The position numbers were made by a program, and so were the translations under genes. Under the pieces are notes generated by a model that worked only from the letters and a program-made list of their open reading frames with translations, was not told the origin of the DNA and ran no database searches. A DNA stretch of 64,000 nt, taken from contig JAXLNO010005103.1 of assembly GCA_038087875.1 (NCBI GenBank), positions 186,001 through 250,000 on the forward strand, given 5' to 3'. This document shows, piece after piece, positions 1 to 33,142 of this stretch; position 1 is the stretch's first letter, and each line of letters begins with the position of its first letter. The DNA is from Malacoraja senta. Taxonomy: Eukaryota.

Positions 1-545
1 CACAGATTCACCACCCTGTGACTAAGGAAATTCCTCCTCATCTCCATTTTAAAAGTACGTATTTTTATTGTGAGGCTGTGCTAGACTCTCCCATTACTGA
101 AAACATCCTATCCACATCCACTAACTGGGACTTTCATTAACTGGTAGGTTTCAGAGATTTCCCCCTCATCCTTCTAAATTCCCACGAGTAGAAGCCCAGA
201 GACTTCAAACATTCCTCATACGTTAAATCAATCATCCCCAAGACATACTTCCTCTGGACCCTCTCCAAAGCCAGCACATCCCTTCTAATATCGAGCCCAA
301 AACTGCTCACAATATTCCAAATGTATCCTCACCAGTGCCCGATAAATCCTCAGCATTATATCATTGTTTTTATATCCTAGGCCCCCGGAAATGAATGCTG
401 GCATTGCATTTGCCTTACTTACCACCGACTCAATCTGCAAATTAACTATTTGGGAATCCTGCACTAGTACTCCCACTTTGTAGCTCAGATCTCTGAATTC
501 TCTCCCCATTTAGTAAATAGTCTGTCTTTATTCCGACTGCCAAAA
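1..545 (-). mobile_element. CR1 RT 3' remnant
   Basis: LGYKNNDIMLRIYRALVRIHLEYCEQFW. Confidence 0.8.
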
Positions 546-605
546 TGTAAAACCAGACACTTGCTACACTGTATTCCATTTGGCTCTGCTTTGCCCACTC
601 GGTGG

Positions 606-886
606 AACTGCTGTCTTACAGCACCAGAGACCCGGTTCAATTCTGACTACGGGTCCCGTCTGTACAGAGTTTTGTACCTTCTCCCCGGGACCTGCGTGGG
701 TTTTGCCTGGATCTCCGGTTTCCTCCCTCAGTCCAAAGACATACAGGTTTGTAGGTTAATTGGCTTGGTATAATTGTAAATTGTCCCCTAATAAGTAAGA
801 TAATGTAAGTGTGCAGGGATCGCTGGTTGAGGCAGACTCGTGGGCCAAAGGGCCGGTTTCTGCGCTGTATCTCTTAAACTAAAACC
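606..886 (+). mobile_element. HE1/V-SINE (tRNA-derived)
   Basis: Box B-like head, V-domain gggttt..ccgg..tccggtttcctcc..ccaaagac, CR1-derived tail ctctaaactaaa. Confidence 0.85.
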
Positions 887-943
887 ACATTCCATTGACT
901 ATCAATAATTCTGGGCAATTAGATAACCACAAATTAATAATGG

Positions 944-3075
944 GTGGCACAGTGGCGTAGCAGTAGAGCTGCTGCCTTACTGCACCAGAGACCTGGGTTT
1001 GATCCAGACTACAGGTGCTGTCTGCAAGGACATTGTATGTTCTCCCTGTGACTGCGTGGGTTTTCTCCGGGTGCTCCGGTTTCCTCCCACACTCCAAAGG
1101 CATACAGGCTTGAAGGTTACTTGGCTTAGGTAAAATTGTAAATTGTCCCCAGTGTGTTGGTTAAAGGTCTGTCTCACTGTGCGAGTTGACCCACGAGTGA
1201 CCCCGAGTGAAAGACTCGTGGTTGCGTACGAGACTACAAGTTTATGATCCAGAGTTTAACCGAGTTCCCACGGGCATGTCTAAGTTTCCCGTTTACTTCT
1301 CATTTCTGCGATGTTCCAAGTTCGTCTCCCGAGTGTACCAAGTTCCTCTCCCGTTAATCTTGAGGCAACAATGTATATCGAAGTGTTGAAAAATTATCAC
1401 ATGTTAAAAAAATGATGTCATGCCAGCCAAAGAACGTAGAGACTATTGTGTTTGCTGCATATGTTCTGCACAACCTGATCCGTATCAGAGGTGCAGCTTC
1501 AGGATCAGCAACAGCCATACAGGACGGTGACTTAGTGGACAGTCAAACAGGGAGAATAACACTAGGTGCGTGGAGGAGTGGTACAAATGACGAGACTTTG
1601 GTGCCACTGCAGTGTTTTCGAGGTAACACGGGGACCAACAGTGCAAAAGAGCAGAGAGACCATCTCTGCTCCTACTATAATTCAGAATTGGGCAGTGTGC
1701 CATGGCAGGACAGCTTATTTTGAGCGGCTGCCGACCACAGGTACATCACTGCATGAGGAGAGCCCACATGCAGAAGAATCCAGTTAATTTCATGTTTAGT
1801 TTAAATCCTGCTGACTTTTCATTGTTTAACTTTAAGTGTGGATTTTATTTTTTATTGTGGTGTAAAAGTAATTTCATTGCATCTGTCTTTCCTTTAAAAC
1901 GTGGTTATCATGCATCTGCTTATCTGATTGTAGATCTCAAAACTTGTCATTTAGCGCATTGCATTGTATCTTTTATTGCCTGAATTTAGACTTGTGCATT
2001 TCTCAGCTGAATTAGTATATAGTGGAAATACTTTTATTTGTGCTTCATTTGTTGATTTTCATTTATGAGAAGCCCTTTTCAGACAGTGGTGTTTGCTGTA
2101 GTGCTACGTTTCTCAATATGCGCAAAAACGCGTTTTTTATATTGAACAAGAATAAAGACTTTGTTTCACATTCAAGACATTTGTTTCACATAAGACTTTG
2201 TCTTATTTTCTGATCTACTGAGAGGTGACAATTTTAAACATTTAAAAAGCACAGCATATGAGGCAGTTGAGTCCTTAAATCTCACAAATGATTGTGAGAA
2301 TCAAGATGTGAATATATTTTGCCTTCCTCTATTTTGTGTTTTATGATGAAAGGAATATTACATTCAAGTCATGAGACTTTGTAGTGATATTAAAATGAAG
2401 ACTTCCAGACATCAATTTGATCTTGATAGCAAATAACTCTCTTTTATTGTGCAATGAAGTAAACAAACAGTGAGAATCAAACGGATCAGCAAAAAGCTTT
2501 TCAACACAACACAACACAACACAAATTTATATATAAACTTCAAGCAATTTTTTCTTTTCAACCCACTCTGTCACCTTATCAATAACTTGCTTAACTTTGT
2601 TAAGCAGAATTTGTCTTTAAAAAGTCTAAGTAACTGATATTTCTGTCCCTGATTATTGTTTCTAAAAAGAGTTCCCACGGTAGAATCACGAGTCACAAAG
2701 TTAAACGCACGGGCCACTACGTTCTTACAACGAGTTTAAAATGTTTCAAATTTTAACCACAAGAGTACATTTTACTCGTGGAAAAGTACAAACATGTTTG
2801 AACTTTTGCAAGAGTTAACAAGTTTCACGTGTACCTCCCGTTAGCACCAAGAGTTGCCAAGTTGCGTCCACGAGTTCAGACGTTTCCGCTACGTTAATTG
2901 TACGTGATTACCACGAGTTAAATTTGTTTTAAACTCGGGGTCACTCGTGGGTCAACTCGCACAGTGAGACAGCCCTTTTAGTGTAAATGTACAGGATGAT
3001 CACTGTTCGGCAAGGACTCAGTGAGCTGAGGGGTCTGTATCTGCACCATATCTCTAAAGTCTAAAATCTAAAGCC
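944..3075 (+). mobile_element. V-SINE split by the Harbinger element (944-1163 and 2981-3075)
   Basis: SINE sequence resumes exactly after the TTA duplication. Confidence 0.85.
1164..2977 (+). mobile_element. PIF/Harbinger deletion derivative inserted into a V-SINE
   Basis: About 45-bp TIRs (aaggtctgtctcactgtgcgagttgacccacgag... / ...ctcgcacagtgagacagccctt), TTA target duplication at 1161-1163 and 2978-2980, transposase C-terminal remnant IVFAAYVLHNLIR at 1412-1723. Confidence 0.9.
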
Positions 3076-3166
3076 ACAGTTTAGTTAAGAGTGTGAGTTG
3101 AGGCTGTTATCTCAGTCCAGGAGGTTTATTGTCTCAAGTGATCAGCCTCATTGACTTGCCACTTAC

Positions 3167-3439
3167 CCTGTGGAACATTGACTCCCTGCAGCAGAGTTGC
3201 ATGTTCGATGTAACAGGAGAATTTTGCCACATCTTCTCTACTCAGTTGAATTGTATTCTTCAGCTGGTAAGTCCCGTCCCAATTGGGCAACAGATCACTG
3301 GATTCAGACTCGTGGACCCCCTCACCATCTCTCAGCCACGTTACATCGATGGCCCGTGGGTAGAAGCCTGTGACAAGGCAGGAGAGTCTCAGTGATTGTG
3401 ACCCATCACGTTTAATCCCAATAAACACCTCAGGGGTTT
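3167..3439 (-). CDS. Second class I alpha3-type Ig C1 exon (orphan within the window)
   Basis: Acceptor cttacacttgcag, donor G|gtaagt, 273 nt phase 1-1, no stops; LSCLVTGFYPRAIDVTW...PNWDGTYQL...FSCYIEH with both Cys and the core Trp. Confidence 0.9.
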
Positions 3440-4426
3440 CTGCAAGTGTAAGAAGCGTCAGAATCAGTGAAGACATGAACAAAAGCCTTCAATTGTAAGA
3501 TCACTGCAACTCGCCTCTTTCCCAATCAGTTTTTTCTCCAGCTGAACTAAGTTTTCAGCCTAGACCCAAAATGCTGGAATAACTCAGCAGGTCAGGCAGC
3601 ATCTCTGGAGAGAAGGAATGCCCAGAGATGCTATCTGACCCACAGAGTTACTCCAACATCTTCTATCTTCGGTGTAAACCATCATCTGCAGTTCTATCTT
3701 GCACAAAGTTTACAGCCTTTTCTCTTTTCATTTTGCATTTCTGGCAAAACAACAAAACATTTAGTTTTAATATCACTGACATGCTCCTTATCTTAGCTCC
3801 AGACTTTAACTGACAGTGCAGATGAAAGGGGAATGCAGGGCCCAATGGAGGAGTATAACTCACCATTGGTATTGATGCTGTAGACATGATTGCTCCTACT
3901 TGTTCATCAATCTCTGCTGAATAATAACACCAAATATTCCAAGAGGGAATGGGAGGAAGAAGTTCTTAAAATAGAGAACTGTTGGAAATTGGATGTCACC
4001 ATCCTAAGGAGTAATAGTAAGATTAAATGAGAACTTACCAGTTTGAAGTTTGATCTTTATTTTATGAGGAGTTACGACGAGGGATTACGTGAAGAAGACC
4101 CCGTCCAGCCGCATGCGCGTCAATCTTCAAAGCAGCGGTGTGAAATCACAGGTAATAGTAATTGAAGTATAATAGTAAGATTAGAGAAGACTAGAACTAC
4201 CAGATGACCTTTATGAGGGTTGGGAGTGGAGGGCACGTAATCCCTCATCGTAACTCCACATAAAATAAAGATCAAACTTCAAACTGGTAAGTTCTCTTTT
4301 AATCTTACTATTTTACTTCGGAGTCACGTGAGTGATTATGTGAAGATTTCAAAGCTCTGTGATTTCATGCCGCAGATTCAAATCCAGGCGTCTCACTGCA
4401 TCGATTGACTCAGAATGAGTAAATAA

Positions 4427-5503
4427 TCAATAATGCATCAAACCATAACATTGCTTTAAACGCATTAATGGTTTATTTTGTAAAGAAACAATAGCAACCC
4501 CTTCTATCCCAGGGGGAAACCATAAAACTGAACTCAAAACAGAATGGGCAAATACCCCCAGTTTGGCAATTGGTTTATGATAAAACGTTTGGAACATCAA
4601 TTCACTGGGCCATCCTGCGGCCGTGAGAATATGGTCTATAGGGACGTCCATTGCCCTGGCCGCTGAAGTTGATGCCGCCCTGATGGAATGAGATTTAAAA
4701 TTGTCGGTGTCAATCCCAGCATAAAGCAGAACCTGCTTTAGCCACCTTGAAATAGTCTGAGCTGACACCTTTCTATGCGATTTTCTGTGGCTAATAAACA
4801 ATGCTGATTCCGCACCTCTTAGGGTTCTGGTAGCCTCGATGTAATATAACAAACATGACACCACACACAGGCGGGAATCTGTAGGGTATGCCGAAAAAGT
4901 AATCTTACACCCTGTCGCCCCTAGTCTACTCTGCTTGAGCAAATTATAGATGTAAAAAATGACGGTATCTGCTGACACTTCCATCCTGTCTAGTCGCAGC
5001 TTCTGTAATGTCTGCACACATTGGGCTGAAACCAACACCATAAGCATGACTACCTTCATGGTGACTTTGGCCAAAGACAGGGCTGTGACAGGAGTCTACT
5101 GACGAAGGAGCATAAGAACTTTGCTTACATTCCAGATTACCGAATACCTGGGCCTGGGAGGATTGGAATTAAAAATTCCTTTCATAAATCTAGAAACTAG
5201 AGGGTGTGTCCCCACAGAATATAGTTCTGATCCCATGGATAAGTATGAAGACAGAGCACTTCTGGCTGTATTGATCGCACTATAGCTTAACCTATGATCG
5301 AAATAGAGCATTGACAAGAATTCCAGCACGTCTGGGATGCCTGCAGTTTGATATGAAATATTCTGCCGTAAGCAGAACACCTCCCACTTTTTTATCAAAG
5401 AGATGTACTGCTTTTGGGTACTATCCCTCCAGGCCGCAGTGATAACATCCACGGTGCGATCGGATAGTCCTCTCCCCAGGTATGGCCTTCTTAGAATCTG
5501 CAA
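4427..5503 (-). pseudogene. DIRS tyrosine recombinase (split)
   Basis: YSAINTARSALS N-terminal domain; FKSHSIRAASTSAA (HxxR), AAGW and FQTFY (catalytic Tyr). Confidence 0.92.
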
Positions 5504-6384
5504 ATTAATAGATCAATACGATCATGTAAAGGATGTTGATCGCCAGTTACCGGGTGCACCAGTAGGTTTCTATGTTTGGGAACAATCATATGAGGCTGTG
5601 TAGTCATCTGTAAAACGAGAGGGAACCATGGATGAGTAGGCCAGTCGGGTACCACCGATACTCGTGAGGCGGAGACCTGCTTGATTTTTTGCAGACGCCG
5701 ACTCATGAGGCAGAATGGAGGAAATGCATATAAAAACATTCCACCCCAATGCAGCGAGAATGCATCTACTGCTGCTGCCCCATGAACTGGTTCCAATGAA
5801 ACATATTTAGGCAACTGGTGGTTTAGTCTGGATGCAAACAAATCGATATTTGGCATCCCAAACTGAGCAGCAACATCTTTAACTATGTCATGACTCAACA
5901 TCCATTCTGTGTTGTCATTGAATTGGTGTGACCTAGTGTCTGCCACTATGTTGAATCTACCTGGTAAGTAGATTGCTGAAAGCCAAATGTCTTTGGGAAT
6001 ACACCAGCTCCAGATCTGATTAGCCAATCTATCACAAGATTCCGACCTGACTCGACCCATATGATTAACATACGCCACTGCTGTAGTGTTGTCAATTTGA
6101 ACCTGCACATGCAAATGACTCTTGGTAGGGCAATAAGCTTTAAGCCCATAAAACGTTCCCAAAAGCTCTAAATAATTGATCCCTCGTAATTGCCGAAGGG
6201 ATGCCTCTTCCCTATTCCATCTGCCTCCACAGCTGGAAAAAGTATCAGTAGCATCCCAACCTAGAGCACTAACATCAGTCTGTAAAACTATGGAAGGTGG
6301 TTCAACCAAAATTTTCCTGGAACTACTTGAGACATTCATGATCCACCATTGTATTTCAGCAATGGCTTCAGCTGGTAATTCCAT
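5491..6384 (-). pseudogene. DIRS RNase H plus methyltransferase-like domain
   Basis: LQTDVSALGW, INYLELLG, IDNTTAVAYVN, YLPGRFNIVAD; then IDLFASRLN and LYAFPPF. Confidence 0.9.
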
Positions 6385-6725
6385 GGACCTATCAAATTGA
6401 CCTGAATGTGTCCTCAGTGCCTGTTCTTTTGCTCATTGTAATTGTTGATAATGCAGAGGTCCAAACTGCACAGCTGGAAAAGCAGCCACTAATTTACCAA
6501 TCAAGCTCGCCACCTGTCTGATTGAAGGTCGTTGTTCAGCAATGAGCTTGATACCACCTTCAATTAACTGCAGCCTTTTATCCCTGGGCTGTCACCAACA
6601 TGTGATCTGAGTTAATAGTGAAGCCCAAGTAATGAATAACATTGACTGGTGTTAATTTGGATTAACTGGATGGTTTGATGAACCCCAATTTCTCAAAAGT
6701 GAGTATAACAACGGAAACGGATGAT

Positions 6726-7623
6726 TCAGCTGCGTCCCGAGTCTTTCCTACAATTATCGTCCAAATAGGCCATTACGATATGACCCCGAGCTCGAAGTAG
6801 CCTCAGAACTGGTTTTAACAATTTGGTAAACAATCTAGGAGCTGAGGTTAATCCATTAGGCAGTGCTTTGAATTGCCATAATTGACTCATCCAGCTAAAC
6901 TTCAAATATCTCCTATTATCGCAATGAACAGACACTGAGTAATATGCATCTTTAAGATCTATGCTTGCCATATAACCCTTTGGAAATCAGCTGTTTAGCA
7001 GTAGGGAAAGTTTCCATTTTGAAATGTCTATACTGTACAAAAGGATTAAGGCTCGTCAGGTCCAGGATGATTCTACATCCTCCATCCTTTTTAGTCCTAG
7101 GAAATATATTGGACACAAACTGGTGGGGTTGACGAACCCCAATCACCTCATTCTCAATCACCCCTTTATTGCATAATTCCTCAAGTTCTGCCTTTATCTC
7201 CATATTCTCTTCGTGTGAGAAAATGAGTGTCCGGCTTGGAACATGCTGAGTGGGTGGACACAAATTAGGATAGAATTCAATTTGAAACCCTTCAATACTG
7301 CACAGCACAAACGGATCTGATGTTATCTCCTGCCATTCTTTTAGAAACAAGTGTAACCTACCCCCAACTTGTAAATATTTCCCAATTGAAATGTTTCTAT
7401 CAGGAGCAAAACCACCTACCTGCATGGTTATTGGTGGAACTTGTTGCCCCCGGTTCCTCATGGGAAAATTCATGTTTGCCCGTGTGCCTGTAGCAGGGCG
7501 CCAGCTGCGCATATTCGGGAATGAACGGCTCGTTCCTTCACCAGCCCCAGTCATTGCACCCCGTCGGTAGGGGAACTGCCTCCGAACCATTTTGCTGCCC
7601 ATCAGCGCTTTGATTAACCCCAC
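6726..7623 (-). pseudogene. DIRS reverse transcriptase (split over two frames)
   Basis: FVSNIFPRTKKDGGCRIILDL, FKME, SIDLKDAYYSV, FKALPNGLTSAPRLFTK, YLDD. Confidence 0.92.
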
Positions 7624-7714
7624 TGTCTTAGCCTCATCATCGAGCTTAGCGAGGTCCTCCCCAAACAGCAGATTTGGCAGTTGAACATTGCTGGGCTTGC
7701 ACTGCGCTGCAAAT

Positions 7715-8089
7715 TTAGGGTGAATTGTAGGGCGTGTGGCACTTTTTCCTCAAACAGTTCACTTCAAAATGTGCACTGCACAGAAGACCTAAGACCTTTG
7801 CGGAGGTGAATCCTCCTGGCCCGTCAATGGGTCTAGCAGACTTAGAAGTAGCCTTACGCCCCAACGGCACGGTGATGGTGCTCACAGGCAACGTGTCTGC
7901 AGTCGCTAACCCCCCTGCTAATGATGGTACAGGTGAACTAGGTGGGCACCCGCTACCCGCACTCCCGCGGTCTTCCAAGCTTTTAGCAGCGGGTCGCCTC
8001 GCCTTCACCTTAGAAGCTTTCTGCATGTTGATCTCGCTCTGAAAAACAAGCGTTTCCACCAAAAAGCAACCTCCAACTAAGTTGAGCAC
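7715..8089 (-). pseudogene. DIRS gag-like ORF1 N-terminal part (gag appears internally shortened)
   Basis: Position at the 5' end of the element, low-complexity basic/Pro/Ser-rich sequence, abrupt join near 7740 to a gag C-terminal segment. Confidence 0.55.
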
Positions 8090-8242
8090 TTACCCCGAGG
8101 TTTTAAACTTACCGCTGGAGAAGCGCTGCACCATGCGTCTGACGTAATGACGCGCACGCGGCTGGACGGGGTCTTCTTCACGTAGTCACTCACGTGACTC
8201 CGAAGTAAAATCCTTGATTTAAATCAGAAAATACAAACAAAA

Positions 8243-8500: not shown

Positions 8501-10540
8501 CATTAGTCCCAACTCCCCACGCTTGGCTCATAACCCTCTAAACCTATCCTATGCATGTACCTGTCCATTGTCTGTTTATTGTTATGATAGTACCTGTCTC
8601 AATCTCCTCCTCTGGCAGCTCGTTCCATATACCCACCACTCTTTGTGTAAAAATGTTACCTCCCAGGTTCCTATTAAATCTCCCCACTCACCCCCTCTCA
8701 CCGTAAACCTATACCCTCTGGTTCTCGAGTCCCCTATTGTGGGCAAAAAACTCATGCGCATTTACCTGATTGATTGATCTCATAATTTTGTAAACCTCTT
8801 TCAGATCACCCCATCCTCCTGCACTCTAAGGAATGAAATCAGAGCCTTCTCAACCTCACCCTCCCTGAACATAGACTCAGTGACTTGCAGAACAGTTCAG
8901 CATAGGAACAGGCCCTTGGGCCCATACCTTCTGTTCTGAACGTGATGCCAAGTTGCACTAATCTCCTCCACCAACACATGTTCCATATCCCTCCTTTCCC
9001 TGCATATCTATGCCTTTCTAAAGACTTCAAATGCCACTATCAAGTATCCTTGTAAATCTACTCTGGACTCTTTCCAGCTGGTGTGTTAAAAACAAAGTGC
9101 ATGAAGAATTCAGTGTGTCAGGCAGCATCTGTGGTGGGAATCGACTGACAACGTTTTGAAGTCACCAGTCTGAACAAGAGTTCCAGCCTGAAATGTCGTT
9201 GGTTCATTCCATCCCACAGATGTTGCCTGACCCACTGTGTTCCTCCAACAGTTTTGCTCAACGATCCAATATCTGCAGTTTCTAGTATCCCCAGAGATCT
9301 GTTAACTGTTACCATTCATTTGCCCTATTTTATTACATTTTGTATTACATTTCTGTTAAATTATGTTGCAGTCTTGGAAATGTTTTCACCTCAGCTGCAA
9401 ACCTGCGTTCCTAGTGCACATTTCTACATTAATCATGCTAAATTATGATCATTGCCACCAAAGCACCTCATCACTACCACTACAATACTACTCCCATCTT
9501 GCTGCCAAGCAATACCCACCATTTTCTATACAGTCGCCTTAATACTATTTCTTAAATGAATTTGAGATCCTCTGCACTCTGCTTCAGTGACAGGTAATAT
9601 TAAGTGTAAATTCACAACTATTTATTGTTCTGGGGTGGGTTATTTTGCACCATATAAACAGGCCAAAATATTTCTCCTTCCGTATCCCTAAGTTTATTTG
9701 ATATACAATGATAAATACAAATCAATGGATCATTTAAATGTTTACTGTGCTGATGGGGACCATTCATCCTATCAGGCCAATGCCACCTCTCTACTGGAGA
9801 AAATCACTTGTTCAACCCCAGCCCCTCGACTGTAGTTTTGCATGTTTTTGCTCACAATTAGTTTATCCAATTCTCTCTTTGTAATGAAACATAAATAGGA
9901 TTCGGATCAATGAACGGAGAAAGAAAATTGCAGGGGTACAAATTACTATCTTTATTACATCAAATTACAAGACAAAGCATTAAAAAAGCAACGAATCTCA
10001 TGGTTTTCAGCTCAATGTGTTAAATGATAGAAGCCGTAGCAAATACCATCAAGTCTCACAGTCTTCTGCCCATTGGAGACTCCTTTTTATGATGGCTGGT
10101 ATAGAGATCTTGCGGGCCCAGCCACTGTCCTTCAAAGGTTCTGCATTAAATCAAGCACCGAGCTATTCTTGCATGTCTCGGAGAAAAGAAAGGTTTAACT
10201 TATCCTTTAGCTACACTAAATATCCTTGTAGGCTGCTCCATAATTTCCCAGTTATTCTAAGTGAGCCCTCAATCATCTAATTGTTTCCCAAAGCCAGCCT
10301 ACTTGCTTACCATAAAGTGCTGTTAGCAGAAAATTTAATCTTAGGTGAAAACCCCGTTTACCTTTTCCAGTGCATTAAGGGCATAATGGACCCAACTACA
10401 CAACATCTACATGCCATACACTTGAAATTCCAAACGCACGTTGCATAGAATTCCTTGTCCGCTCTCAAACCCTTCAGCAAAGTGAGCAGCCTCCCTATCC
10501 ATTCTTCCATTCAAAGATTGATAATTTTCCAGAGCTCGTA

Positions 10541-11062
10541 AGAGGGAGCACATAACGCCTATTCTGGCCTCCCTCCACTGGCTGCCTGTGTACTTTAGAG
10601 TTCATTTTAAGATTCTTTTATTTGTTTTTAAATCTTTAAATGGTCTCGCCCCGCCTTACCTCTCTGAGCTGCTTCATCCCTACGCTCCTGCTCGGTGCCT
10701 CAGGTCAGCTGATCAGCTGCTCCTGGAGGTACCGAGGTCTAAGCGGAAGCTCAGAGGGGATAGAACCTTCTCTGTTGCTGCTCCGACATTATGGAACACT
10801 CTACCTTTGCACATTAGACAGGCCCCTTCACTGTCCATTTTCAAAACTAGTCTTAAAACCTTTTTCTATTCCTTGGCTTTTGACCCTGCATGAGACTTTG
10901 CTCCTGTTTTAGTGTTTCTATTGTTTTTTATTGTTTTTACTGTCTTTTAATGTTTTTATTGTTTTGTTTTATGTTTATGATTAGTCATGTACAGCACTTT
11001 GTTGCAACAGTGGTTGTTTTTAAAGTGCTCTATAAATAAAGTTCAGTTCAGTTCAGTTCAGC
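10541..11062 (+). mobile_element. 5'-truncated L2-clade LINE with (GTTCA)n tail
   Basis: Stop-free EHITPILASLHWLPV...FKILLFVFKSLNGLAPPYLSELL...GDRTFSVAAPTLWNTLP; 3' end aaagtgctctataaataaa-(gttca)4. Confidence 0.9.
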
Positions 11063-14000
11063 TCCAAGAATTTAATATGTTCCTCCCTCTGACTCTTGAG
11101 ATTCCTCCTTATCCCTTTCTAAAGATACATCATGTTATTCTGAGAAATGTGCTTGCCAAGACCATGGCATCTGCAGTTTTAGTCTCCTGATCTTAGGAAG
11201 AATGTTCTTGTTATGGAGGGAGTGCTGTGAAGGTTCAGCAGATTTCAGGGATGGGAGGACTAATGTATGAAGGGCGATTTGGGCGATTAGTTTTACATTG
11301 TGATTAGGACCATTCAAAATCAACTACAACATTCTTATGGGTCTGTACAGATTGAAGAGAGTCAAGAGTGTTTTATTGTCATATGTCCCAGATAGTACAA
11401 TGAAATTCTTACTCGCTGCAGCACAATGGAATATGTAAACATAGTACATGGTAAACAATATGAAAAACGAGAAAGAGAAAAACAAAATCAATGTGCACAT
11501 ATATATATATATACACACACACACAAACATATATGTGTAGAAAAGTACGCATACATATATTCAAGAGGGAAATCCGGTCAGTTCAGGATCCAGTGGTCAC
11601 AATCTGATGGTCAGGCTTCAAGTTGAGATGAAGAGCGATTACTTCTCCCACAGAATGATGAAGGTGTGGAATGTTATACCACTGGAAGCAGTTGAACACA
11701 GATCATTGAATTTATACAAGGAGTTATATGTTATTTGTATGGTCAAAGGATCAGAGAAACAAAAGGATCAAGCTATAAATTTTAGGTCACAATTGATCAC
11801 ATGGAATAATAGTTCAGGCTCAAATGCCTGAATTCCTATTACTTTTATATTCTGCATTTCAACATTTTTATATTTATCGTGGCCACATTTCCTCTGCATT
11901 AAAGAACATGATAACTGGGATGCTTAAAAGGAACCGAGACCCTGGTGCCAATGCCTTTTTGCAGATGCATACATTGGTTTGGTGTTCACAAAGCGAGGAC
12001 AAATCAGAAATAATTTTCTGAACACGCCATCCATTGCTATTTCAATGTGCTTACCCAAGATACAAAAAAATAATACTATATTAATCTATATTAAAAAATG
12101 TTTGGATAAAATAAACAAAACACGGTCATCGAATGTCCCTGGGTAAGTCGTCCACCCCCTGCCCTCCACCCCTTTGAGAAGTGGCTGAAGGGTGATATTA
12201 AAATACATAAAGCTTTTAAATGAATCACTATGGTGAAAACATTTCCACCATAAAATCCAGCAGGGAATTCGACAGAGAATGCTCCCTCTCCTCCCCTCCC
12301 ACCCAATACTGGTGAGAATGAGGATCCAGATCAATGAATTGCATTTAGGGGACGGCTGGGCAAACACAAAAGAGAAAAGAATAGTCGGTTCTACATTGGA
12401 GAATCCAGCATAGACTTGCCAACCATGTTGCAGATCGCATAAGGTGGGAAGAGGCTCATGTGGACCATATGCAGCAGTATTGGCAGGATCGGCAGAGTGG
12501 CCTGTTCCTACACACTTGTCTCCACTACAACCTTGTATTACTTTGACTGCCAATTCATTTTTGATCATTTTGTTCCCATTCATTCTTTAAAAAATACAAA
12601 ATCAACTTTGACGTAAGATAACTGTGATTGATGCTGTTGCAAATAAATGGAGGCCTTACATTTTCTTAACAACAATTTAATTTTGCGCCTTGCATATTGT
12701 ATCTTTCATATTATATCTTGCACATTCCATATATCTTGCCTTTACTTCGCAACATGAAGCCACTATAAAACAGGGTGCAATCCAATGTGTTTACTTGGAT
12801 TTCATGCCAATCTATTTCCAAAAATCTTATAATCAATGGTCTATTCATCAAGCACATTCTACAGGCAACTATTATTAGGTGAAATCTCAAGAGCAGAACT
12901 TGTACCAAATGAGCCACATAAAATGAACTTGATCACTGTGCCACCAATCACTGTGGACAATTTTATATTCATATGGATGATAAATTCTTTGCATTAGATT
13001 AGAAATGTACAAAGTACAAACAATCAAGACTTTTTGACATCATCAAATAACCAAGTGTTATGTAACAACATTTATTGGTGCTGTGTCTCAGACTAAATGC
13101 AGTGTTAAAACAAAATATATTCTATCCAATAATGACTGTAGCTAATGGAATCTGCAACTAAAAACAGAAGACTGAAAGCATTCAATGGCTCAAGCAAAAT
13201 TATTGGGACAAATGGTTGATGTCACAAATAGGGTCAAGAACCTGCACCAGACCTGTGAGGGAAGAGGATGAATTGCCAATATATAGCAATCAGGGAGGAA
13301 TAGGACAGAGGCTGGTAGATCAAACGTAGAACCAGGTGGGGAGAGGATAATGGGTAGATGGAAACAGGTAGGAGAGGAGGAGGAAGAGGTGAACAACAGG
13401 AGAATAAACTGTTCAAATGAGACAGAGGTTCACTTGCACCTCTTTCAACTTTCTCTACTGCATTCATTGCTCACACTGCGGAGAAACTAGCTTAGATGTC
13501 AACCATTTTGTAGAGCACATCCCTTTGAAGTAAAGATCATCCTGAGATCTGTTGTATGGTATTTTAATACCCCTTCCCACTCTCACACTCACCCATCTGT
13601 CGTTAACCTTGGGCACAGAAAGTTTTAAGTAAAATATCTGATAATCCACCTGGGTAACTTACAAGCCGATGGTATGAATATAAAGTTTTCACATTTCAGC
13701 TTATCCATACCACTGGTGTTCATTTGTTCTCCCACAACCACCCATACACCAACTTTGCTCCATCTGCCCATCATCCCCTCCCCAGCTGATTCCACCTGCC
13801 ACTTACCAGTCTCTGCCCCATTCCTCCTTCAAACTGTTAGAATCTTCCCATCCTCTCATTCAATTCTAATGCAGTGCCTTGCCTTGAAATGTTGGTATAT
13901 GTCAGTTGCCTCCACAGATGCTGTTTGACCAAGTACTTCCACTGGCCTTTCTTTAGTCTACAATTCTTGTTGGAAATAACCACAAAGTCTTACTCTATCT

Positions 14001-14116
14001 ATAATTGAAACCATTTAATTGGTGCTTAGAGAGCTTTCTAAAATCATGAGGGCGATTGATCAGGATTTATTTTACCCAGGGTAGGGTAATCAGGAACCAG
14101 CAAAAACAGGTTTAAG

Positions 14117-14751
14117 CAGTGTTCAATGCTAATTTTTTAGGTGTCGGAGCTGTCAAACAGGGGCATTTCAGATTTTGCTGGGGGGGGGGGGGGCAAGCCA
14201 GTCTCCCTAGAGGGTCAAACAAGATTATAGCCTATTACTACATCCCAGTGTATAGCTAGCACATTAAAACATATAATACAATTTAATTATGACAAAATAT
14301 TGCACCGTTGCACTCACTGATTATCATGAAATATAATTATGAAGCAAGTAAAGAAAAAGACGGTTATCATGTATTTTTACAGAGGTGCCGGCAAGACACC
14401 GACTCGCCCTGACTATCCTGCAGCTCTGGGCCTTCACACACACACACACTCTCACCCTCACACCCATTCACCCTCACACCAACCCACTCACCCACCCACC
14501 AGAGTTCCAGGCTCAGCTCCAGGCCCACAACCACAAACGATGCACACATCACATGGTCTGTCTCTGCTGCATCATAGTGTTCCCCTCCTCCTACAGGGAA
14601 CCTCAGTAGTGATGGGTCTTCCCCTTACCCCTCTTTTAATCAGGTTACCCCGACCACACATCCGCTAGTTAAAATTCCACGCTGTTTATTTTTTCTTTAA
14701 CAGAGGTGCCGGATCGGTGCTCAGGTGAGCTCCGGCAGCACTGCACCCCTG
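14117..14751. mobile_element. Non-autonomous hAT element inserted in a CR1 remnant
   Basis: 8-bp TSD ggtttaag (14109-14116, 14752-14759); imperfect CAG..CTG TIRs. Confidence 0.82.
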
Positions 14752-15672
14752 GGTTTAAGGTGAGGAGGAAGATTTAGTAGGAACCTGAGAGGCAACCTTT
14801 TCTACTAAGAGGTTACTGGGTGTATGGAATGAGCTGCCAGCGAAGGCAGAATAACAACATTGAAAAGACACTTGGACAGGTACATGGATAGAACATGTTG
14901 AGAGGAAAGTGGGCCAAACGCTGGCAAATGTGACTAACCTAAATGTAGCATCTTGTTCAGCTTGGAGCATTAGGCTGAAGTACCTACTTCCATGCTATAT
15001 GGCTCTATGACTCTTTGTTAGATGAACATAAACATGGCAAATGGAGTTTAATAATGGAAAATATGTGCTCACACACTTTGGTAAGAGCAATTCAAAGGAA
15101 GCTATTATCTAAATGGAGTGAGATTGCAAATGAGTGGAGTACAAGAGATTCAAGTGCTTAAAGTGCAAAACAAAAAGCCAGCAGATAGATGCAGCACACA
15201 ACTCAGAAGGTGAGTAGCATTGAAAGGTAGGTTACTATTGTAATTATGGTACATGATGTTGCTAAGGACAAATCAGGAGCACTGTGCACAGCTTGGTCCT
15301 CAAATTTAAGAAAGGATATATTAATATTGGATATCAGCTAGAAGAGATTTCTGGAATAAGCAAGTGTTGCCTAACCATGAATGGCTGAAATCACTGGTTC
15401 TGTGTCCCTTGGAGATGACAAGAAACAGAATTAACCTTATGAATGTATTAAAGAGGCATGATGTGGTGGTGAATTGATGGATAATGCGTGGATATATTCT
15501 AAAAGAACAGGGAATTGTGTCTTATGTGGAATAAGCACAGTAAAGGAGTTGAGGCATCAGTCATATCAGTTGTAATCAACATAAATTGCTAGATAGCTCT
15601 AATTTGTACAAATGCAGGGCAGACTATTGAGAATTTCTGTCATGTTTGATAAACTTAATTTAACTCTTTCCA

Positions 15673-15678
15673 TTTATT
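15673..15678 (-). terminator. Candidate polyadenylation signal AATAAA of the class I-like gene
   Basis: tttatt on + strand just downstream of the predicted stop codon. Confidence 0.5.
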
Positions 15679-15729
15679 TCAGTTCCTGCGTTTAAATCAC
15701 ATCCATGAAATCTTCTACTCAGCGATTAG

Positions 15730-15770
15730 TTAGCAGTGCACGTTCTGCTTTGGTTGAATATTTTGATAAT
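15730..15770 (-). CDS. Probable terminal cytoplasmic exon (D)YQNIQPKQNVHC*
   Basis: Strong pyrimidine tract and acceptor (tttaacttccctcctcag); phase-1 compatible with the TM donor; TAA followed about 50 nt later by AATAAA. Linkage to the TM exon is inferred. Confidence 0.65.
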
Positions 15771-15899
15771 CTGAGGAGGGAAGTTAAATATTAGACAACA
15801 AAGAAATGGCATAGCAGAGAACAGAACTCAGAAAGATGCAACTAGTTTATTTGCTTTAACTGTTGATTCATCCCACATAACATCTTCCTTCCAGATATA

Positions 15900-16412
15900 A
15901 AGGCACAGCGCCAGACACCTGGGTTTGATCCTGACCACGGGTGATGTCTGTATGGAATTTGTACCTTCTCCCTGTGACTGCATAGGTTTTCTCCAGGCGC
16001 TCCAGTTTCCTCCCACATTCCAAAGACAGATGTGCAGGTTTGTAGGTTAATTGACTTGTGTCCCTAGCTTATGTGGGTGATCGTTGGTTGGTGCGGACTC
16101 AGTAGGGCCGAAGTGTCTGTTTCAATGCTCTCTCTCTAAACTAAACAAAAAACTCAATACTCCTTCAAATAGTTTCGTTCACACAAGTTCTATGTTATCT
16201 AACTTTCGCTTCCACACTAGGGTCAAATTACAGAGACCAATTAACCCATAAAACCTGGCATCTTTAGTATGTGTGTGAAAACTGGAGGACAGTGGAAACC
16301 CATGCGGTCATAGGGAATACATGCAAACTTCACACAGCCGACAACCGAGGTTAGGATTGAACTGATGTGTATGACGCACTGAGGCAGCAGCTCTATCAGC
16401 AGCGCCACTCTG
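15900..16412. mobile_element. Tail-to-tail pair of V-SINEs (+ then -) just upstream of the terminal-exon acceptor
   Basis: 15900-16150 forward, about 16170-16412 reverse; both carry the V-domain. Confidence 0.75.
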
Positions 16413-16949
16413 CCTCAGGTTGCGTCATGTTCAGCACAAACATTGTTGGACAAAGGACCTGTTCCTCTATTACAGGGGCATTCCCATTCACCGTAAAATT
16501 CAGCGAACTCAGCACCATTGGGTCACTGGAAATATTCCCTGCCTGACCATCAGATCCCTCCAGATCAGTCGGACAGACACCAGTTAGGCAGCATCTGCCT
16601 GCAAATGATTCATGTCCCTCAAACCCCTGCATCTCCATGCACCCACGAAGGTGCACCCCAGACGCCACCATCCCTGGCAGTGCTTTCCAGGCACACACCA
16701 CATAGTATGTAATAAAAACTTGCCCTTTTTAAAAACTGCAGCTTCTACCCTGCACTGAATATAATGCAATAATTTAAATGCCATAGTAGGCATTTAGTTA
16801 ATTGGGATAATTTTAGTCAATTGGGAGGTGTGATTGCAAATCTTGTACAATATCATAAACCAAGTAAAATGTGACAAAGTCAAAATGGCCAGGCACAAAG
16901 AACAGAATAATCATGAACATCAATAACATGTCAGTAGCTAGACTCTCCT

Positions 16950-19900
16950 AGTGGCAGCATGCTGTAAGGTTGCAAACTCGTTTGCTCCCTTAATTTTTAA
17001 CTTCCACTCACCACTCTTTCAATGTTACTGGTGACTATTTGACTTCAAGACACCGTCTAACTGTTCATAAAGTGTTGATAACACTTTTACACGCCTTAAT
17101 CGTGAAAAGGATGGAGACAAGAAGGAAAGGAGGATCCCCAAAGAAGGAACTGGGGAAAGCCACAACCACAGCTGCAGCTTCTGATTCCAGCATCATAGAA
17201 GCAATATCGAAAATGAACGATGAATTGAAAAATGAGCTGAAAAATGAAATGAAAACAAGATTTGGCAGTTTGGAAGAAATGGTGAAAGGAGTTTCGACCA
17301 AATTGAAGGAAGTCCAAGGAATACTGTCTTTGTTACAAGATGAACTTCGTGAACAAAAGGATCAAATTGATATCTTGCGCACCCTGGGACAGGCGAGAGA
17401 TTTGAAGATTGAAAAATTGGAACGGCGAATGAATGAAAACACTCGAGCACTTCAGCAATACAAGTCTAAAAATATGGACTTAGAAAACAGAAGCCATCGT
17501 TTGAATTGACGAATTGTTGGTTTGCCGGAAGGCCAAGAAGGAAATAACGTTATAAAATATGCTTCTAAAATGATAAAGGAAACATTCAACATTGAGCACA
17601 ATGAAAACCTTCCGTTCATGGATAACGCACACAGGATTGGGAAGAGATCCGGTAATAAACCGAGACACTTGATCATTCGGTTTCATTTTTTTCAAATGAA
17701 GGAGAATATTCTCCAGGCAGCAAAAATGTTTGGTGTGATTGAATATGAAGGATGTAAGTTTCGGTTTGTCCCTGATTATAGTTACGAGCTTTTGGAAATA
17801 AGAAAGACTTTTTATAATGTAATGTCTGATTTACATAAGAAAAACTGCGCCCAGCTTTATTGTCACCAGCTAGATTGCGTATTCGGCTTTTCAATGGTAA
17901 CTTTTGATTTTTTAACAGTCCTCAAGACGCCTCCAGCTGCGTCTGAAGAGCTACGACGAGGAAGGGGAGTAATTGATAGCTGATTAAGTTATAATTGGAG
18001 ATTTACTGTTCCTATTTTGACAACATTTCGTTTGGTAATGATTAAGAATTTAACTGGACGAGTTGTTTTTCGTTTATATATATTCTTTTAAGAATTTCTT
18101 TGTTAATTCGTGTTCTCCTGTCGTTAGACAAACTAAGAGAACGCAGTTCTTGTTTTTCATATCTTGACCTTGGATAATAATAAGCAGCATTCCATGCCAG
18201 TCTGTATTTTTTTTTCTTCTCTCTCAAAGAGATAATAACGAATGTGCTATGACGTAATGGTTAAATATTATTCATTTTATGCTGAGCGCTGTTACTGGGA
18301 GAGATGGGATCATGGAGGGGATTAGGTAGTTTGCTGACTGTCTTTTGGTCAGTTTGGGGTTCTACAGGGGTGGGAGGGGGGAGGGGGGAGGGGTCTTTTG
18401 TTCCTTATTTAGTGATCTCCATTTGTGCAAATTCTGAACTACAAAATTGGCTGAAATGTCGTCACCTGGCTCCGCCCTAGATTTTACTTCTTCCAGTATT
18501 ATGAACTTTTAGGCTTCAAGAAATTAACCCATTACATCCCACATGATTTTTACAAGCAATATGGATAAAGTTCCTTTCATGGAATGTGAATGGCTTGAAC
18601 CATCCGATTAAGAGGATTTAAAAAAAAAAGTTCTTCACAGACTAAATGCTCAGATTATCTTTGTTCAGGAAACTCATGTAAGGCAAGATGACAAGTCACG
18701 ATTTTTCAAGTTTTGGAGAGGACAGCAGTTTCATTCAAATTCACAGGCTAAGGGGAAAGGAGTCTCTATTTTTATCGACCCCTCAATTCCGTTTGTTCAG
18801 CATGAAACAATTTCTGATCCATATGGCAGATTCTTGGTGATTACCGGTGTCCTTTATAGGCAAAAGGTCGCTATGGTGAATGTCTATGCACCAAATATTG
18901 ATCACCCTGAGTTTTTTAAACAGTTAATTGCATCCTTTCCTAATTTAAATGAACACTTTTTAATAGTGGGTGGAGACTTCAATTGCTGTTTGAATCCCTC
19001 GATTGATAGATCTACATCTGATCATGTGCTTCCAAATAAATCAGCTAATTTTATTAATTATTTTTTACTTGACTCGGGAATGTTAGAAATTTGGAGATTC
19101 TTACACGCAAATGACAAAGAATTTTCATTTTTCTCTCATGTATATCATAGTTATTCTAGGATCGACTATTTTATACTAGATTCTCGGCTAGTTCCATCGG
19201 TCATTGCATGTGAGTATGATACAATTGCTATTTCTGATCATGCACCAGTGAAACTATTGATCAAACTACCTGATTCCAAGTTTAGTGCTAAACAATGGCG
19301 ATTTAATACTACTTTGCTTCAAGACTTAAACTTTATTAAGTTTATGAAAGATCAGATTGCTTTTTACTTCTTGACAAACTCTAATGAAGAGATATCCAAT
19401 GATATAGTTTGGGATGCTTTTAAGGCATATATTCATGGACAAATTATTTCATACTCCGCGGGATTAAAAAAACAAACACAAAAAGAAATACACACATTGG
19501 CTGACGAGATTAAAGAAATTGATAAAAAATATTCAAAAGCTCCTAGTTTAGAGCTCTATAAGAATAGAGTTGAACTTCAATTGAGATATGATTTGTTATT
19601 AGTATCACCGATTGAGAACCAGTTACGTAAAACCAAAAGTAAATTTTATATAAATGGCAAAAATCTGGTAAATTACTTGCTAATCAATTGAAAGCAGTGT
19701 CGGCCAAGAGTCAGATTACTAAAGTGAGTAAACGGGATGGTACAGTAACTGTAGACCATGATGAAATTAATAAATCCTTTCAGGAATTTTATACCTCCCT
19801 ATACCAATCAGATTTTCCTACTGATTCCAATATAATGCATGAGTTTTTAAAGAAACTGAACTTACCAAATTTACCATACAATGAGTCTCTGTTGTTAGAT

Positions 19901-22790: not shown

Positions 22791-23320
22791 TACTGAATAA
22801 AAAAGTTGGGATGTTCTGCTACAGTTGTACAAGATGTTGGTGAGGCCACATTTGGAGTATTGTGTTAAGTTTTGGTCACTCCACTATCGGAAGGATGTCA
22901 TTAACAGGGCCTGTGATTCAGGGAGAGGATGAGAATGCTTGGACTTTAGTCCTTGGCACGCAAGAGGCTGAGGGGTGATCTTATAGAAGTTTATAAAATC
23001 AAGGAGCATAGATAGATTGAATGCACAGAATCTTTTAACCAGCCTTGTGTAATCAAGAACCAGAGGACTTAGGTTTAAGGTGAGAAGGAAACGAGTTACT
23101 CGGAACCAGAGGAAGTGGAAATATGGAAGAACATTCCAGGGGAAGGAGTTGAGGCAGGTATTAAAACACATTTAGAACACACTTGGACAGGTACATACTG
23201 TAGATAGGAAAGGTTCAGTGAGATATGGGTCAATTCCAGGAAAATTGTAGTTTAAACATGGCATCTTGGTTGGCATGGCTAAGTTGAGGCAAAGGGCCCA
23301 TTTCCATGCCGTATGACTAT
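22790..23320 (+). mobile_element. CR1 3' remnant
   Basis: Degenerate YKSWDVLLQLYKMLVRPHLEYC and RLRGDLIEVYKI, followed by CR1 3' UTR. Confidence 0.75.
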
Positions 23321-24007
23321 GGCACCGTGGGCTTGAAAAGCCAATTCTTTTCCGTTTCACTGCTAAATGATAGTTAATCACCCTCAGTAATAGTGACCAC
23401 AATGGCAGACCCATGACCATGACTGGTTTACAGTGATAATAAGCTAACCATTGCCTCAGTTCAAATATGCATGTCGTTGATGTTCAATGACTAAATTGTT
23501 GCTGCATTCTTAGTTTTGGCAAGGTTCTGATCTGGGTGCTGGAGCTGTTAGACATCTTGATACCATGAAAGCAGAATCTCAATTTCAGGAAATATACTTG
23601 CTGAATGGTGTCTCAGACCAGCAATGCCAGGGAACATTGTATTTTGAAGAGGAAATATTACACAACCAAGGCCAAGTGCTCGAGAAAGCAGCACGTCTGT
23701 TATTTCAATGAAAACTCTGCTCTTCATCCATCTTGTCATTTTGATCACCCAGTTTAGTTTATAATATTGTATAACATTTGCAATCAATTCTCACAGTTTA
23801 TGACATTTACAGCTGGCGTGAAGATGCATCAGTCAATACCTTCTGTCTTCCAATTTAGTTTATTTAATAGAAAGATAGAAACATTAAAAAATAGGTGCAG
23901 GAATAGGCTATTCGGCCCTTTGAGCCATACATGGCTGATCATCCAAAATTAATACTCCGATCTGGCTTTTTCCCCATATCCCTTGATTCCCTTAGCCCTA
24001 AGAGCTA

Positions 24008-24330
24008 AATACTCTCTCTTGAAAACAGTGATACAGTGTGTAAACAGGCCATTTGTGCCACCAAATCCATACTAACCAGCAATCACCCATTCATAATAGA
24101 TTTCCCATCCACTCCTACACTATCAGGGTGTCTTACCAAGGATGATTACCTGCACACCTGCTCATCTTTGGGATATGGGAGGAAACCGGAGCTCCCTGAG
24201 GAAGCCCACATAGTCACAAGAGAATGTGCAAACTCCACGTAGACAGTACCCAAGGTCCAGATTGAACCTGGGTCTCTGGCGTTGTGAGGCAGCAGTTCTA
24301 CCAGCTGCACTACCATGCTGCATTACGTAC
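24008..24330 (-). mobile_element. V-SINE
   Basis: Reverse-complement head and V-domain. Confidence 0.75.
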
Positions 24331-33070: not shown

Positions 33071-33142
33071 TGAGAATATATAGAACATAGAACAGTACAA
33101 GAACAGGACTTTCAGCCTGCAATGTCCATGTGGAACAGGATA

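What the first reader, a model, noticed from the sequence alone, without database searches (positions are those of the whole stretch)
3167..3439. Intact but orphan second class I alpha3 exon downstream of the gene's poly(A) site
Seen: a stop-free 273-nt phase 1-1 Ig C1 exon with strong splice sites, both cysteines and the core Trp, on the same strand as the class I gene but about 12 kb beyond its predicted terminal exon. It matches the gene's own alpha3 at only about 33 of 91 positions by eye, so it is not a recent tandem copy. It ends VNVPQ without the usual terminal Trp and has Trp at the G237-equivalent position (PNWDGTYQ), near the beta2m interface. I found no alpha1/alpha2 exon between 3.5 and 26.5 kb. 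Inference, four models: (a) alternative splicing joins the same alpha1-alpha2 platform to either of two constant regions (alpha2 to this exon is in frame); (b) alpha3 to alpha3' splicing gives a four-domain class I; (c) the described gene is nested in an intron of another class I gene; (d) remnant of a gene whose platform exons were deleted. Model (a) is attractive because the proximal alpha3 has lost a disulfide cysteine.
Basis: partly seen in the sequence, partly recalled or inferred. Interest (0 to 1): 0.78.

Follow-up and report, generated by a model that had tools for sequence, protein, structure and literature searches.

The report
Stranded alpha3 exon of neighbour gene
The exon is real and undamaged, but it is the leftover back half of a different, sister MHC class I-like gene that was cut off at a jumping-gene boundary, so it is most likely a young gene fragment and not a second constant region of the gene upstream.

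Summary
Window 3167-3439 (- strand) is a stop-free 273-nt phase 1-1 exon with AG and GTAAGT splice sites. It encodes a C1-set Ig domain (Pfam E 5.7e-16) and lies 12.3 kb beyond the stop codon of the class I gene upstream.

It is not a diverged copy of that gene's alpha3. It belongs to a second class Ib lineage ("Y") found across sharks and rays. It is 88% identical to alpha3 of a full-length Leucoraja erinacea gene (P0006) and sits inside the Y clade. The window's own gene belongs to the sister lineage "X" (PDB 9ch4, E 6.5e-120). About 2.7 kb of flanking intron is collinear with the P0006 locus.

That homology stops within 6 bp of the end of a tyrosine-recombinase (DIRS-like) retroelement at 4018-8220. 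The other side of the element is unrelated to Y. No Y-type alpha1 or alpha2 exists anywhere in the 64 kb. A TM/CYT exon is predicted about 1.3 kb left of the window.

No related skate or sawfish locus has a Y alpha3 within 10 kb downstream of X. No annotated or run-assembly-derived (Logan) protein contains the exon.

RNA evidence could not be obtained. The scan noted other class I gene halves elsewhere in this genome.

The parts
3167..3439 (-). Intact alpha3 (C1-set Ig) exon of class Ib lineage Y, phase 1-1, 273 nt
   Evidence: It is 88% aa and 94.5% nt identical to alpha3 of P0006 in L001. In the tree it falls in the skate Y trio (support 100/99) within the Y clade (95/88). It has no private departure at conserved Y columns.
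3440..4017 (-). 3' remnant of Y intron 3, including the polypyrimidine tract and acceptor
   Evidence: Collinear with L001 18480-18997 plus 13612-13656, and with L002 13407-13947. The homologous intron continues in L001 and L002 but is replaced here by transposon sequence.
4018..8220 (-). DIRS-like tyrosine-recombinase retroelement sitting exactly at the 5' break of the Y fragment
   Evidence: Phage_integrase and SAM-like domains are found in ORFs 4427-5074 and 5096-5503, and a YLDD reverse-transcriptase motif is visible by eye in ORF 6726-6971 (no Pfam hit for that stretch). A related copy with the same ends lies at L006 45973-50800. Its two flanks are not contiguous in the empty-site homologues L001 and L002.
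2979..3166 (-). Y intron 4, proximal part, with the GTAAGT donor
   Evidence: Part of the 985-bp block 2979-3963, 91.4% identical to L001 19459-18480. The donor is identical to that of L001.
1163..2978 (.). 1.8-kb DNA transposon with 46-bp terminal inverted repeats, inserted into Y intron 4 in this copy only
   Evidence: TIRs at 1163-1208 and 2933-2978 are 97.8% identical. L001 is contiguous across the site, 19458|19459.
65..1163 (-). Y intron 4, distal part. The TM/CYT exon is predicted about 1.3 kb beyond the window start.
   Evidence: Collinear with L001 20611-19458 at 86-92% identity. The L001 TM/CYT exon starts at 21938.
8663..15729 (-). 3' UTR and downstream region of the X gene, orthologous or paralogous to other skate X loci
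   Evidence: Collinear with A. radiata L007 down to 8663, and with Rhinoraja L003 and L008 down to about 10040.
15730..59600 (-). Upstream class Ib gene of lineage X. Exons: alpha1 about 59339-59600, alpha2 about 36744-37025, alpha3 29351-29617 (second Cys replaced by Trp), TM 26565-26672, cytoplasmic exon plus stop 15730-15770.
   Evidence: tblastn with P0166, P0167, P0261 and P0264 gives 82-94% aa identity per exon. Exon ends were read. The leader exon is not in the window.

Best explanation
The exon is the alpha3 exon of a 5'-truncated copy of a lineage-Y class Ib gene. Y is the sister and genomic neighbour of the lineage-X gene that fills most of the window. A rearrangement with one breakpoint at the end of a DIRS-like retroelement placed the 3' half of a Y gene 12 kb downstream of an X gene. 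That half comprises the last 0.58 kb of intron 3, alpha3, intron 4 and probably the TM/CYT exon just outside the window. The cause was most likely unequal recombination between two copies of the element, during either a duplication or a deletion. The alpha1 and alpha2 exons were left behind or removed. The fragment has no leader or platform exons, so it most likely makes no product. It still looks perfect because it is young: about 2-3% private change in both exon and intron. Shown here: lineage membership, intron collinearity, the break at the transposon end, and the absence of platform exons in the window. Inferred: the recombination mechanism, the presence of a TM exon outside the window, and the lack of function.
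For: Lineage. The exon matches P0006 at 88% and P0007 at 87%, against 39% for the window's own alpha3. In the alpha3 tree the distal exon falls in the Y clade and the proximal exon in the X clade, and each clade mirrors the shark/ray split.

Intron homology. Window 65-1163 and 2979-4017 are collinear with the P0006 locus.

The break. Y homology ends at ...AATAG|TAAGATTAAA, where the retroelement starts. L001 and L002 continue with AGGCAAATAGAG, and that sequence is not found on the other side of the element at 8221.

Missing platform. There is no second alpha1, alpha2 or Y TM/CYT in the window.

Synteny. In Pristis and on L. erinacea scaffold JAMYXN010000384.1 a complete Y gene lies 42 kb upstream of X on the same strand. 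No Y alpha3 occurs within 10 kb downstream of X in Rhinoraja (two paralogues), A. radiata or Pristis.

Precedent for decay. L002 is a dead Y copy, with a stop in alpha2, a codon deletion in alpha3, a 5-bp deletion that removes the alpha3 donor, and a GC alpha2 donor.

Rates. Private changes on the window branch are 6/267 in the exon (3 non-synonymous, 3 synonymous) and 15/533 in the intron, so the exon is not evolving more slowly than the intron.

No product on record. No annotated or Logan-derived protein contains the exon.

Other notes of this scan report class I gene halves and exon-deleted copies elsewhere in the same genome (unchecked).
Against: The exon has no defect at all. Both splice sites are identical to those of the full-length gene, and it shows fewer private amino-acid changes (3) than the full-length gene's own exon (7). 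The 3N:3S ratio leans towards constraint, but this is not significant (my binomial estimate against a neutral 0.76 non-synonymous fraction is about p = 0.15). Transcription and splicing were never tested, because the single read-laying run failed. The region left of the window and the orthologous positions more than 10 kb downstream of X in other skates could not be read. The breakpoint lies in a 4.2-kb repeat, which is also where an assembly misjoin would fall.
Confidence: 0.65

Rival explanations
1. The exon is an ordinary alpha3 of a complete Y gene whose alpha1 and alpha2 are not in the window. Either the assembly was misjoined through the 4.2-kb DIRS-like repeat, or the platform exons lie more than 60 kb upstream with the X gene nested in intron 3.
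For: The exon and splice sites are flawless, and it is the least-changed of the three skate copies. Both sides of the junction are bounded by one repeat. This gene family already has introns of 7-22 kb.
Against: In both genomes where it can be seen, Y is a compact 12-22 kb gene lying wholly upstream of X. Y intron 3 without transposons is only about 1.1 kb. A nested layout would need X inserted into that intron. Long-read assemblies normally span 4-kb repeats (general knowledge, not tested here).
Confidence: 0.15
2. Read-through transcripts of the X gene skip or follow its own alpha3/TM/CYT exons and splice into this exon. The result would be an X platform on a Y constant region, or a four-domain chain.
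For: All junctions are phase 1 and in frame. This X copy's own alpha3 has lost the second disulfide Cys. At a paralogous L. erinacea locus the NCBI models include read-through fusions of X exons to a downstream GPCR gene, one of which skips alpha3 (P0183, P0259).
Against: The transcript would have to pass the AATAAA at 15677-15672 and then 12 kb that includes a same-strand retroelement. The arrangement is not conserved in four related loci. No protein model or assembled ORF combines X exons with a Y alpha3. On the window branch the exon changes as fast as the intron.
Confidence: 0.08
3. The fragment is expressed on its own, for example from a transposon promoter, as an alpha3-TM mini-protein or as a non-coding RNA.
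For: A retroelement lies immediately upstream on the same strand.
Against: There is no signal peptide or in-frame start that would deliver an Ig domain to the membrane. The ORF around the exon starts at a TTG inside the intron. No such ORF is on record.
Confidence: 0.03

Closest known systems
Leucoraja erinacea 'MHC class I-related gene protein-like, partial' (P0006; locus L001 on JAMYXN010000384.1) and its orthologues in Pristis, Mobula, Hypanus and sharks (lineage Y)
   Same: The alpha3 exon is 88% aa and 94.5% nt identical, with identical splice sites. About 2.7 kb of intron 3 and intron 4 is collinear. The batoid 'VPQ' ending and the skate 'NWDG' motif are shared.
   Different: The known gene has alpha1, alpha2 and TM/CYT exons within 12 kb and lies upstream of X. 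The window copy has only alpha3 visible, lies downstream of X, and carries two private transposon insertions.
L. erinacea P0007 locus (L002), a decayed Y copy annotated as a protein
   Same: It is a second extra copy of the Y 3' region in a skate, and its intron 3 is contiguous with the window's up to the break.
   Different: L002 keeps alpha2 (with a stop codon) and has lost the alpha3 donor. The window copy lost alpha2 entirely but keeps a perfect alpha3.
Truncated class I gene fragments in the human MHC (isolated-exon HLA class I pseudogenes left by segmental duplication). Recalled from general knowledge, not tested here.
   Same: Partial class I genes stranded beside intact ones in a repeat-rich, duplication-prone region.
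   Different: Here the fragment is of a different lineage from its neighbour and has no disabling mutation yet.
Elasmobranch CD1-like class Ib genes UFA and UGA (review PMC12562908; Verissimo 2023, PMC10751288), and PDB 9ch4
   Same: X matches 9ch4_A at E 6.5e-120 and Y at 4.6e-64. X and Y are MHC-class-I-type neighbours, present across sharks and rays, and single or low copy in most species. This fits the published description.
   Different: No reference sequences of UFA or UGA were available, so which of X and Y carries which name, or whether either does, is not established. X is multicopy in skates, with at least 10 copies in Rhinoraja.

Membership tests
MHC class I alpha3 exon (C1-set Ig domain) | C1-set fold signature with two cysteines about 55 residues apart and the core Trp | tested here: met
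   Pfam C1-set E 5.7e-16. Cys20, Trp34 and Cys75 are present. The best PDB matches are the alpha3 domains of CD1c, MR1 and 9ch4.
MHC class I alpha3 exon (C1-set Ig domain) | A single phase 1-1 exon of about 270-280 nt with consensus splice sites | tested here: met
   273 nt...ttgcag|AA ... CAG G|gtaagt.
Elasmobranch class Ib lineage Y (P0006/P0154 orthogroup) | The alpha3 groups with Y sequences and not with X or other class I lineages | tested here: met
   IQ-TREE places it in the skate trio (100/99), the batoid Y clade (96/94) and the Y clade (95/88).
Elasmobranch class Ib lineage Y (P0006/P0154 orthogroup) | Flanking introns homologous to those of a Y gene | tested here: met
   Window 65-1163 and 2979-4017 against L001, 86-92% identity.
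Elasmobranch class Ib lineage Y (P0006/P0154 orthogroup) | A complete gene: Y-type alpha1 and alpha2 exons upstream of alpha3 | tested here: not met
   None is found in the 64 kb by tblastn or profile HMM. Y intron 3 is cut 0.58 kb upstream of the exon.
Elasmobranch class Ib lineage Y (P0006/P0154 orthogroup) | A TM/CYT exon downstream of alpha3 | not testable with these tools
   By collinearity with L001 it is predicted about 1.3 kb left of the window start. It is not within 1-3166.
Gene fragment / unprocessed pseudogene | Loss of exons essential for a product | tested here: met
   No leader, alpha1 or alpha2 of its own lineage is in the window. The break lies at a transposon end.
Gene fragment / unprocessed pseudogene | Relaxed constraint or disabling changes in what remains | tested here: inconclusive
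   There are no disabling changes. Private changes are 6/267 in the exon against 15/533 in the intron, with 3N:3S, which is too few to decide.
Gene fragment / unprocessed pseudogene | Not transcribed or spliced into mRNA | not testable with these tools
   The read-laying run failed on a filter. Runs X2 and X3 hold exon and intron words about equally, as DNA would, and the one RNA-labelled run (X1) holds only about 3 of the exon's 26 sampled words.
Alternative 3' constant-region exon of the upstream X gene | The arrangement is conserved at related X loci | tested here: not met
   No Y-type alpha3 within 10 kb downstream of X in L003, L008, L007 or L005. The equivalent site may lie just beyond the fetched DNA in L003 and L007.
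Alternative 3' constant-region exon of the upstream X gene | Transcripts or protein models joining X exons to this exon | tested here: not met
   No protein in the 5.8-billion-sequence collection carries this alpha3 except P0006 and P0007. No direct RNA test was possible.

The most novel reading that the evidence does not exclude
The X copy in this window has lost the disulfide of its own alpha3. It could be rescued by read-through splicing of its CD1-like platform onto the alpha3/TM/tail of the sister lineage Y. That would be natural exon shuffling between two ancient class Ib lineages, created by a transposon-mediated rearrangement.
Probability: 0.06. Interest if true: 0.65.

Novelty: new member of a known kind. 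Interest (0 to 1): 0.25.

Why it matters
Mainly as annotation hygiene and as a small case study. It shows that the skate class Ib region is being reshaped by transposon-bounded rearrangements that scatter intact-looking gene halves. Gene predictors and readers can mistake these for new architectures. It also documents that two sister class Ib lineages are neighbours across sharks and rays, and that one of them matches a solved shark-type structure. This may help people mapping the CD1-like UFA and UGA genes. If the exon were shown to be spliced to the upstream gene, it would become an interesting case of domain swapping between class I lineages. Nothing found here points that way.

Tried and rejected
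- RNA and DNA read evidence.
- Searching the exon alone for short ORFs from run assemblies found nothing.
- A marginal TM-like HMM hit at 12862-12993 (E 0.34) was read and is not a TM exon.
- Two collinear weak tblastn hits at 14430-14703 lie in a low-complexity His/Thr/Pro-rich stretch and were dismissed as chance.
- dN/dS against L001 and L002 (0.61 and 0.44) and branch-specific counts are too small to separate constraint from neutrality.
- Attempts to see the orthologous site in Rhinoraja and A. radiata ended in unrelated repeats at the edge of the 10-kb flanks.
- I tried to name the lineages (UFA, UGA, UDA or UEA) from the literature. No primary paper or reference sequence was in the library, and a search for the PDB code gave only false matches.
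- The species of the window was not established. Its X gene product is not identical to any annotated skate protein. The locus is 90% identical to L. erinacea L006, 89% to A. radiata L007 and 87% to Rhinoraja.

Full report
**The observation.** On the - strand, window 3439-3167 reads cttacacttgcag|AA ACC CCT GAG ... GTT CCA CAG G|gtaagt. In the phase-1 frame it translates without a stop into 90 residues. It has the two Ig cysteines and the core Trp, and it scores as a C1-set domain at E 5.7e-16. The class I gene upstream on the same strand has these exons:
- alpha1 at about 59.34-59.60 kb
- alpha2 at about 36.74-37.02 kb
- alpha3 at 29351-29617
- a TM exon at 26565-26672
- a last exon at 15770-15730 that ends in a stop, followed by AATAAA at 15677-15672

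The exon therefore lies 12.3 kb beyond that gene's stop. It is 39% identical to the gene's own alpha3. Every factual point in the finding checks out.

**What the exon belongs to.** An exhaustive profile search found two near relatives at 89% identity. One is P0006, a 359-aa little-skate (Leucoraja erinacea) class I protein in which this domain is an ordinary alpha3 at residues 194-283. The other is P0007. Further searches defined two orthologous lineages that are each present in skates, sawfish, stingrays, mantas and many sharks.
- I call "Y" the lineage of the distal exon (P0006, P0154 and others; NCBI's automatic name is 'MR1-like').
- I call "X" the lineage of the window's own gene (P0166 in Rhinoraja, P0167 and P0264 in Leucoraja, P0261 in Amblyraja, P0169 in Pristis).

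In a maximum-likelihood tree of alpha3 domains the distal exon sits in the skate Y trio (100/99), inside batoid Y (96/94) and inside Y (95/88). The proximal exon sits inside X (99/99). Both clades follow the shark/ray split. The exon is therefore not an old tandem copy of the gene's own alpha3.

X matches the solved chain 9ch4_A at E 6.5e-120. Y matches it at 4.6e-64, ahead of MR1. A 2025 review states that two CD1-like, MHC-linked, low-copy class Ib genes of sharks and rays, UFA and UGA, have a crystal structure (PMC12562908). X and Y are plausible candidates, but I had no reference sequence to confirm this.

**The flanks.** The homology to the P0006 locus (L001) is not limited to the exon. 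Window 2979-3963 matches L001 19459-18480 at 91.4%. Window 3973-4017 matches L001 13656-13612. Window 65-1163 matches L001 20611-19458 at 86-92%. The window therefore holds the last 0.58 kb of Y intron 3, alpha3, and at least 1.3 kb of Y intron 4. The intron 4 part is interrupted by a private 1.8-kb DNA transposon with 46-bp inverted ends at 1163-2978. In L001 the TM/CYT exon begins 2.66 kb after alpha3. By collinearity it should lie about 1.3 kb left of the window. It is not inside the window.

**The break.** Upstream, the Y intron ends at ...GGAGTAATAG. The window then continues with TAAGATTAAATGAGAAC, which is the end of a 4.2-kb element. That element encodes a tyrosine recombinase (Phage_integrase plus SAM-like domains) and carries a YLDD reverse-transcriptase motif visible in its ORFs. 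A related copy with the same two ends lies at L006 45973-50800. L001 and L002 both continue past that point with AGGCAAATAGAGAATCTG. This sequence does not reappear on the far side of the element at 8221, and no L001 sequence from 12.7-13.6 kb is found anywhere in the window. So this is not a simple insertion into an intact gene. The Y fragment is truncated exactly at a transposon end. Beyond the element and about 0.4 kb of SINE-like repeats, from 8663 upward, the window is collinear with the region downstream of X in Amblyraja (L007), and from about 10040 with Rhinoraja. A single element joining two unrelated flanks is what unequal recombination between two copies of that element would leave. 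That mechanism is an inference. A misjoin in the assembly would look the same.

**No platform exons.** tblastn with 279 class I proteins found one alpha1, one alpha2, two alpha3 and one TM in 64 kb. Profile HMMs of alpha1, alpha2 and TM/CYT, built from the Y set and from the X+Y set and run with all filters off on every stop-to-stop frame, found the same.

**Synteny.** In the sawfish Pristis, the Y gene (CM019888.1, about 13.956-13.978 Mb) lies 42 kb upstream of the X gene (about 14.020-14.057 Mb) on the same strand. The same order and spacing hold on little-skate scaffold JAMYXN010000384.1. No Y-type alpha3 lies within 10 kb downstream of X in Pristis, Amblyraja or two Rhinoraja paralogues. 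The fetched DNA may stop just short of the equivalent site in two of these. X is multicopy in skates: at least ten annotated copies sit on one Rhinoraja chromosome. The region is therefore duplication-prone. The order X then Y-alpha3 seen in the window is not the ancestral layout.

**State of the copies.** L002 (P0007) is a dead Y copy. It has a stop in alpha2, a GC alpha2 donor, a codon deletion in alpha3, and a 5-bp deletion that removes the alpha3 donor. L001 is open through alpha1, alpha2, alpha3 and TM with canonical sites. The window exon shares its splice sites with L001 and has no private change at columns conserved across Y. Three-way counts of private substitutions are:
- exon: 6 (window), 9 (L001) and 11 (L002) of 267 sites
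- intron: 15, 29 and 40 of 533 sites

The window's six exon changes are 3 non-synonymous and 3 synonymous. The exon rate (2.2%) is about the same as the intron rate (2.8%), so there is no sign that selection has protected the exon since the copies split. The numbers are too small to exclude mild constraint. Pairwise dN/dS is 0.44-0.73.

**Expression.** Runs X2 and X3 hold exon words and exon-plus-intron words in similar shares (0.42/0.27 against 0.39/0.30). This is what DNA gives. One run labelled RNA holds about 3 of 26 exon words. No annotated or run-assembly-derived protein of 50-157 aa or 197-628 aa contains this alpha3 other than P0006 and P0007. X-lineage transcripts, by contrast, are present among Logan-derived proteins.

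**Verdict.** The most likely reading (0.65) is a young, 5'-truncated fragment of a Y-lineage gene stranded downstream of an X gene by a transposon-bounded rearrangement. The rivals are:
- a complete Y gene hidden by misassembly or nesting (0.15)
- read-through chimeric splicing from X (0.08); its only support is frame compatibility, the Cys-to-Trp change in this X copy's alpha3, and NCBI read-through models at a paralogous locus
- stand-alone expression (0.03)

Other notes of this scan report alpha3+TM halves and exon-deleted class I copies elsewhere in this genome. They are unchecked, but they fit the picture of a decaying multicopy region.

Noticed in passing
window 29397-29399 (- strand): The X gene's own alpha3 has TGG (Trp) at the second disulfide cysteine (YSWHV). 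Every skate, ray and shark relative examined has Cys (YSCHV). The other four visible exons are open with good splice sites. This copy may be a recent null allele or paralogue, or a base error.
   Followed up: partly
window 1163-2978: A 1.8-kb element with 46-bp terminal inverted repeats (97.8% identical), inserted precisely relative to L001 19458|19459. It looks like a recent DNA-transposon insertion. Its 103-aa ORF has no Pfam hit.
   Followed up: partly
L. erinacea proteins P0183, P0259, P0260, P0262 (LOC129716032, 249,698-bp scaffold): NCBI models fuse X-lineage class I exons to a downstream GPR139-like 7TM receptor, and one isoform skips alpha3. Either this reflects real read-through transcription at a paralogous X locus, or it is a gene-model artefact.
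   Followed up: no
L002 11716-14217 (L. erinacea JAMYXN010000412.1): The annotated protein P0007 is a pseudogene product. It has a stop codon in alpha2, GC instead of GT at the alpha2 donor, a codon deletion in alpha3, and a 5-bp deletion of the alpha3 donor. The model reads through intron sequence.
   Followed up: yes
Rhinoraja longicauda CM130181.1 (P0166, P0271-P0279): At least ten X-lineage genes more than 90% identical to one another are annotated on one chromosome, at 26.4 Mb and 38.5 Mb among other places. A lineage that is low copy elsewhere has expanded in skates.
   Followed up: partly
window 17000-22200 (+ strand): A LINE with endonuclease and reverse-transcriptase ORFs lies antisense inside the 10.8-kb last intron of the X gene.
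   Followed up: partly
window 52100-55750; L001 17008-18367 and 27551-29309; L006, L007, L008: A repeat unit of about 1.2-1.7 kb, at 90-94% identity, recurs in every skate locus fetched. It overlaps the place where another note of this scan reports hammerhead-like retrozyme repeats.
   Followed up: no
P0154 residues 1-72 (Pristis L004 10001-10216): The sawfish Y model starts with a 72-residue Gly/Arg/Gln-rich N-terminus encoded in a locally repetitive stretch, where a leader peptide would be expected. This is probably a wrong first exon.
   Followed up: no
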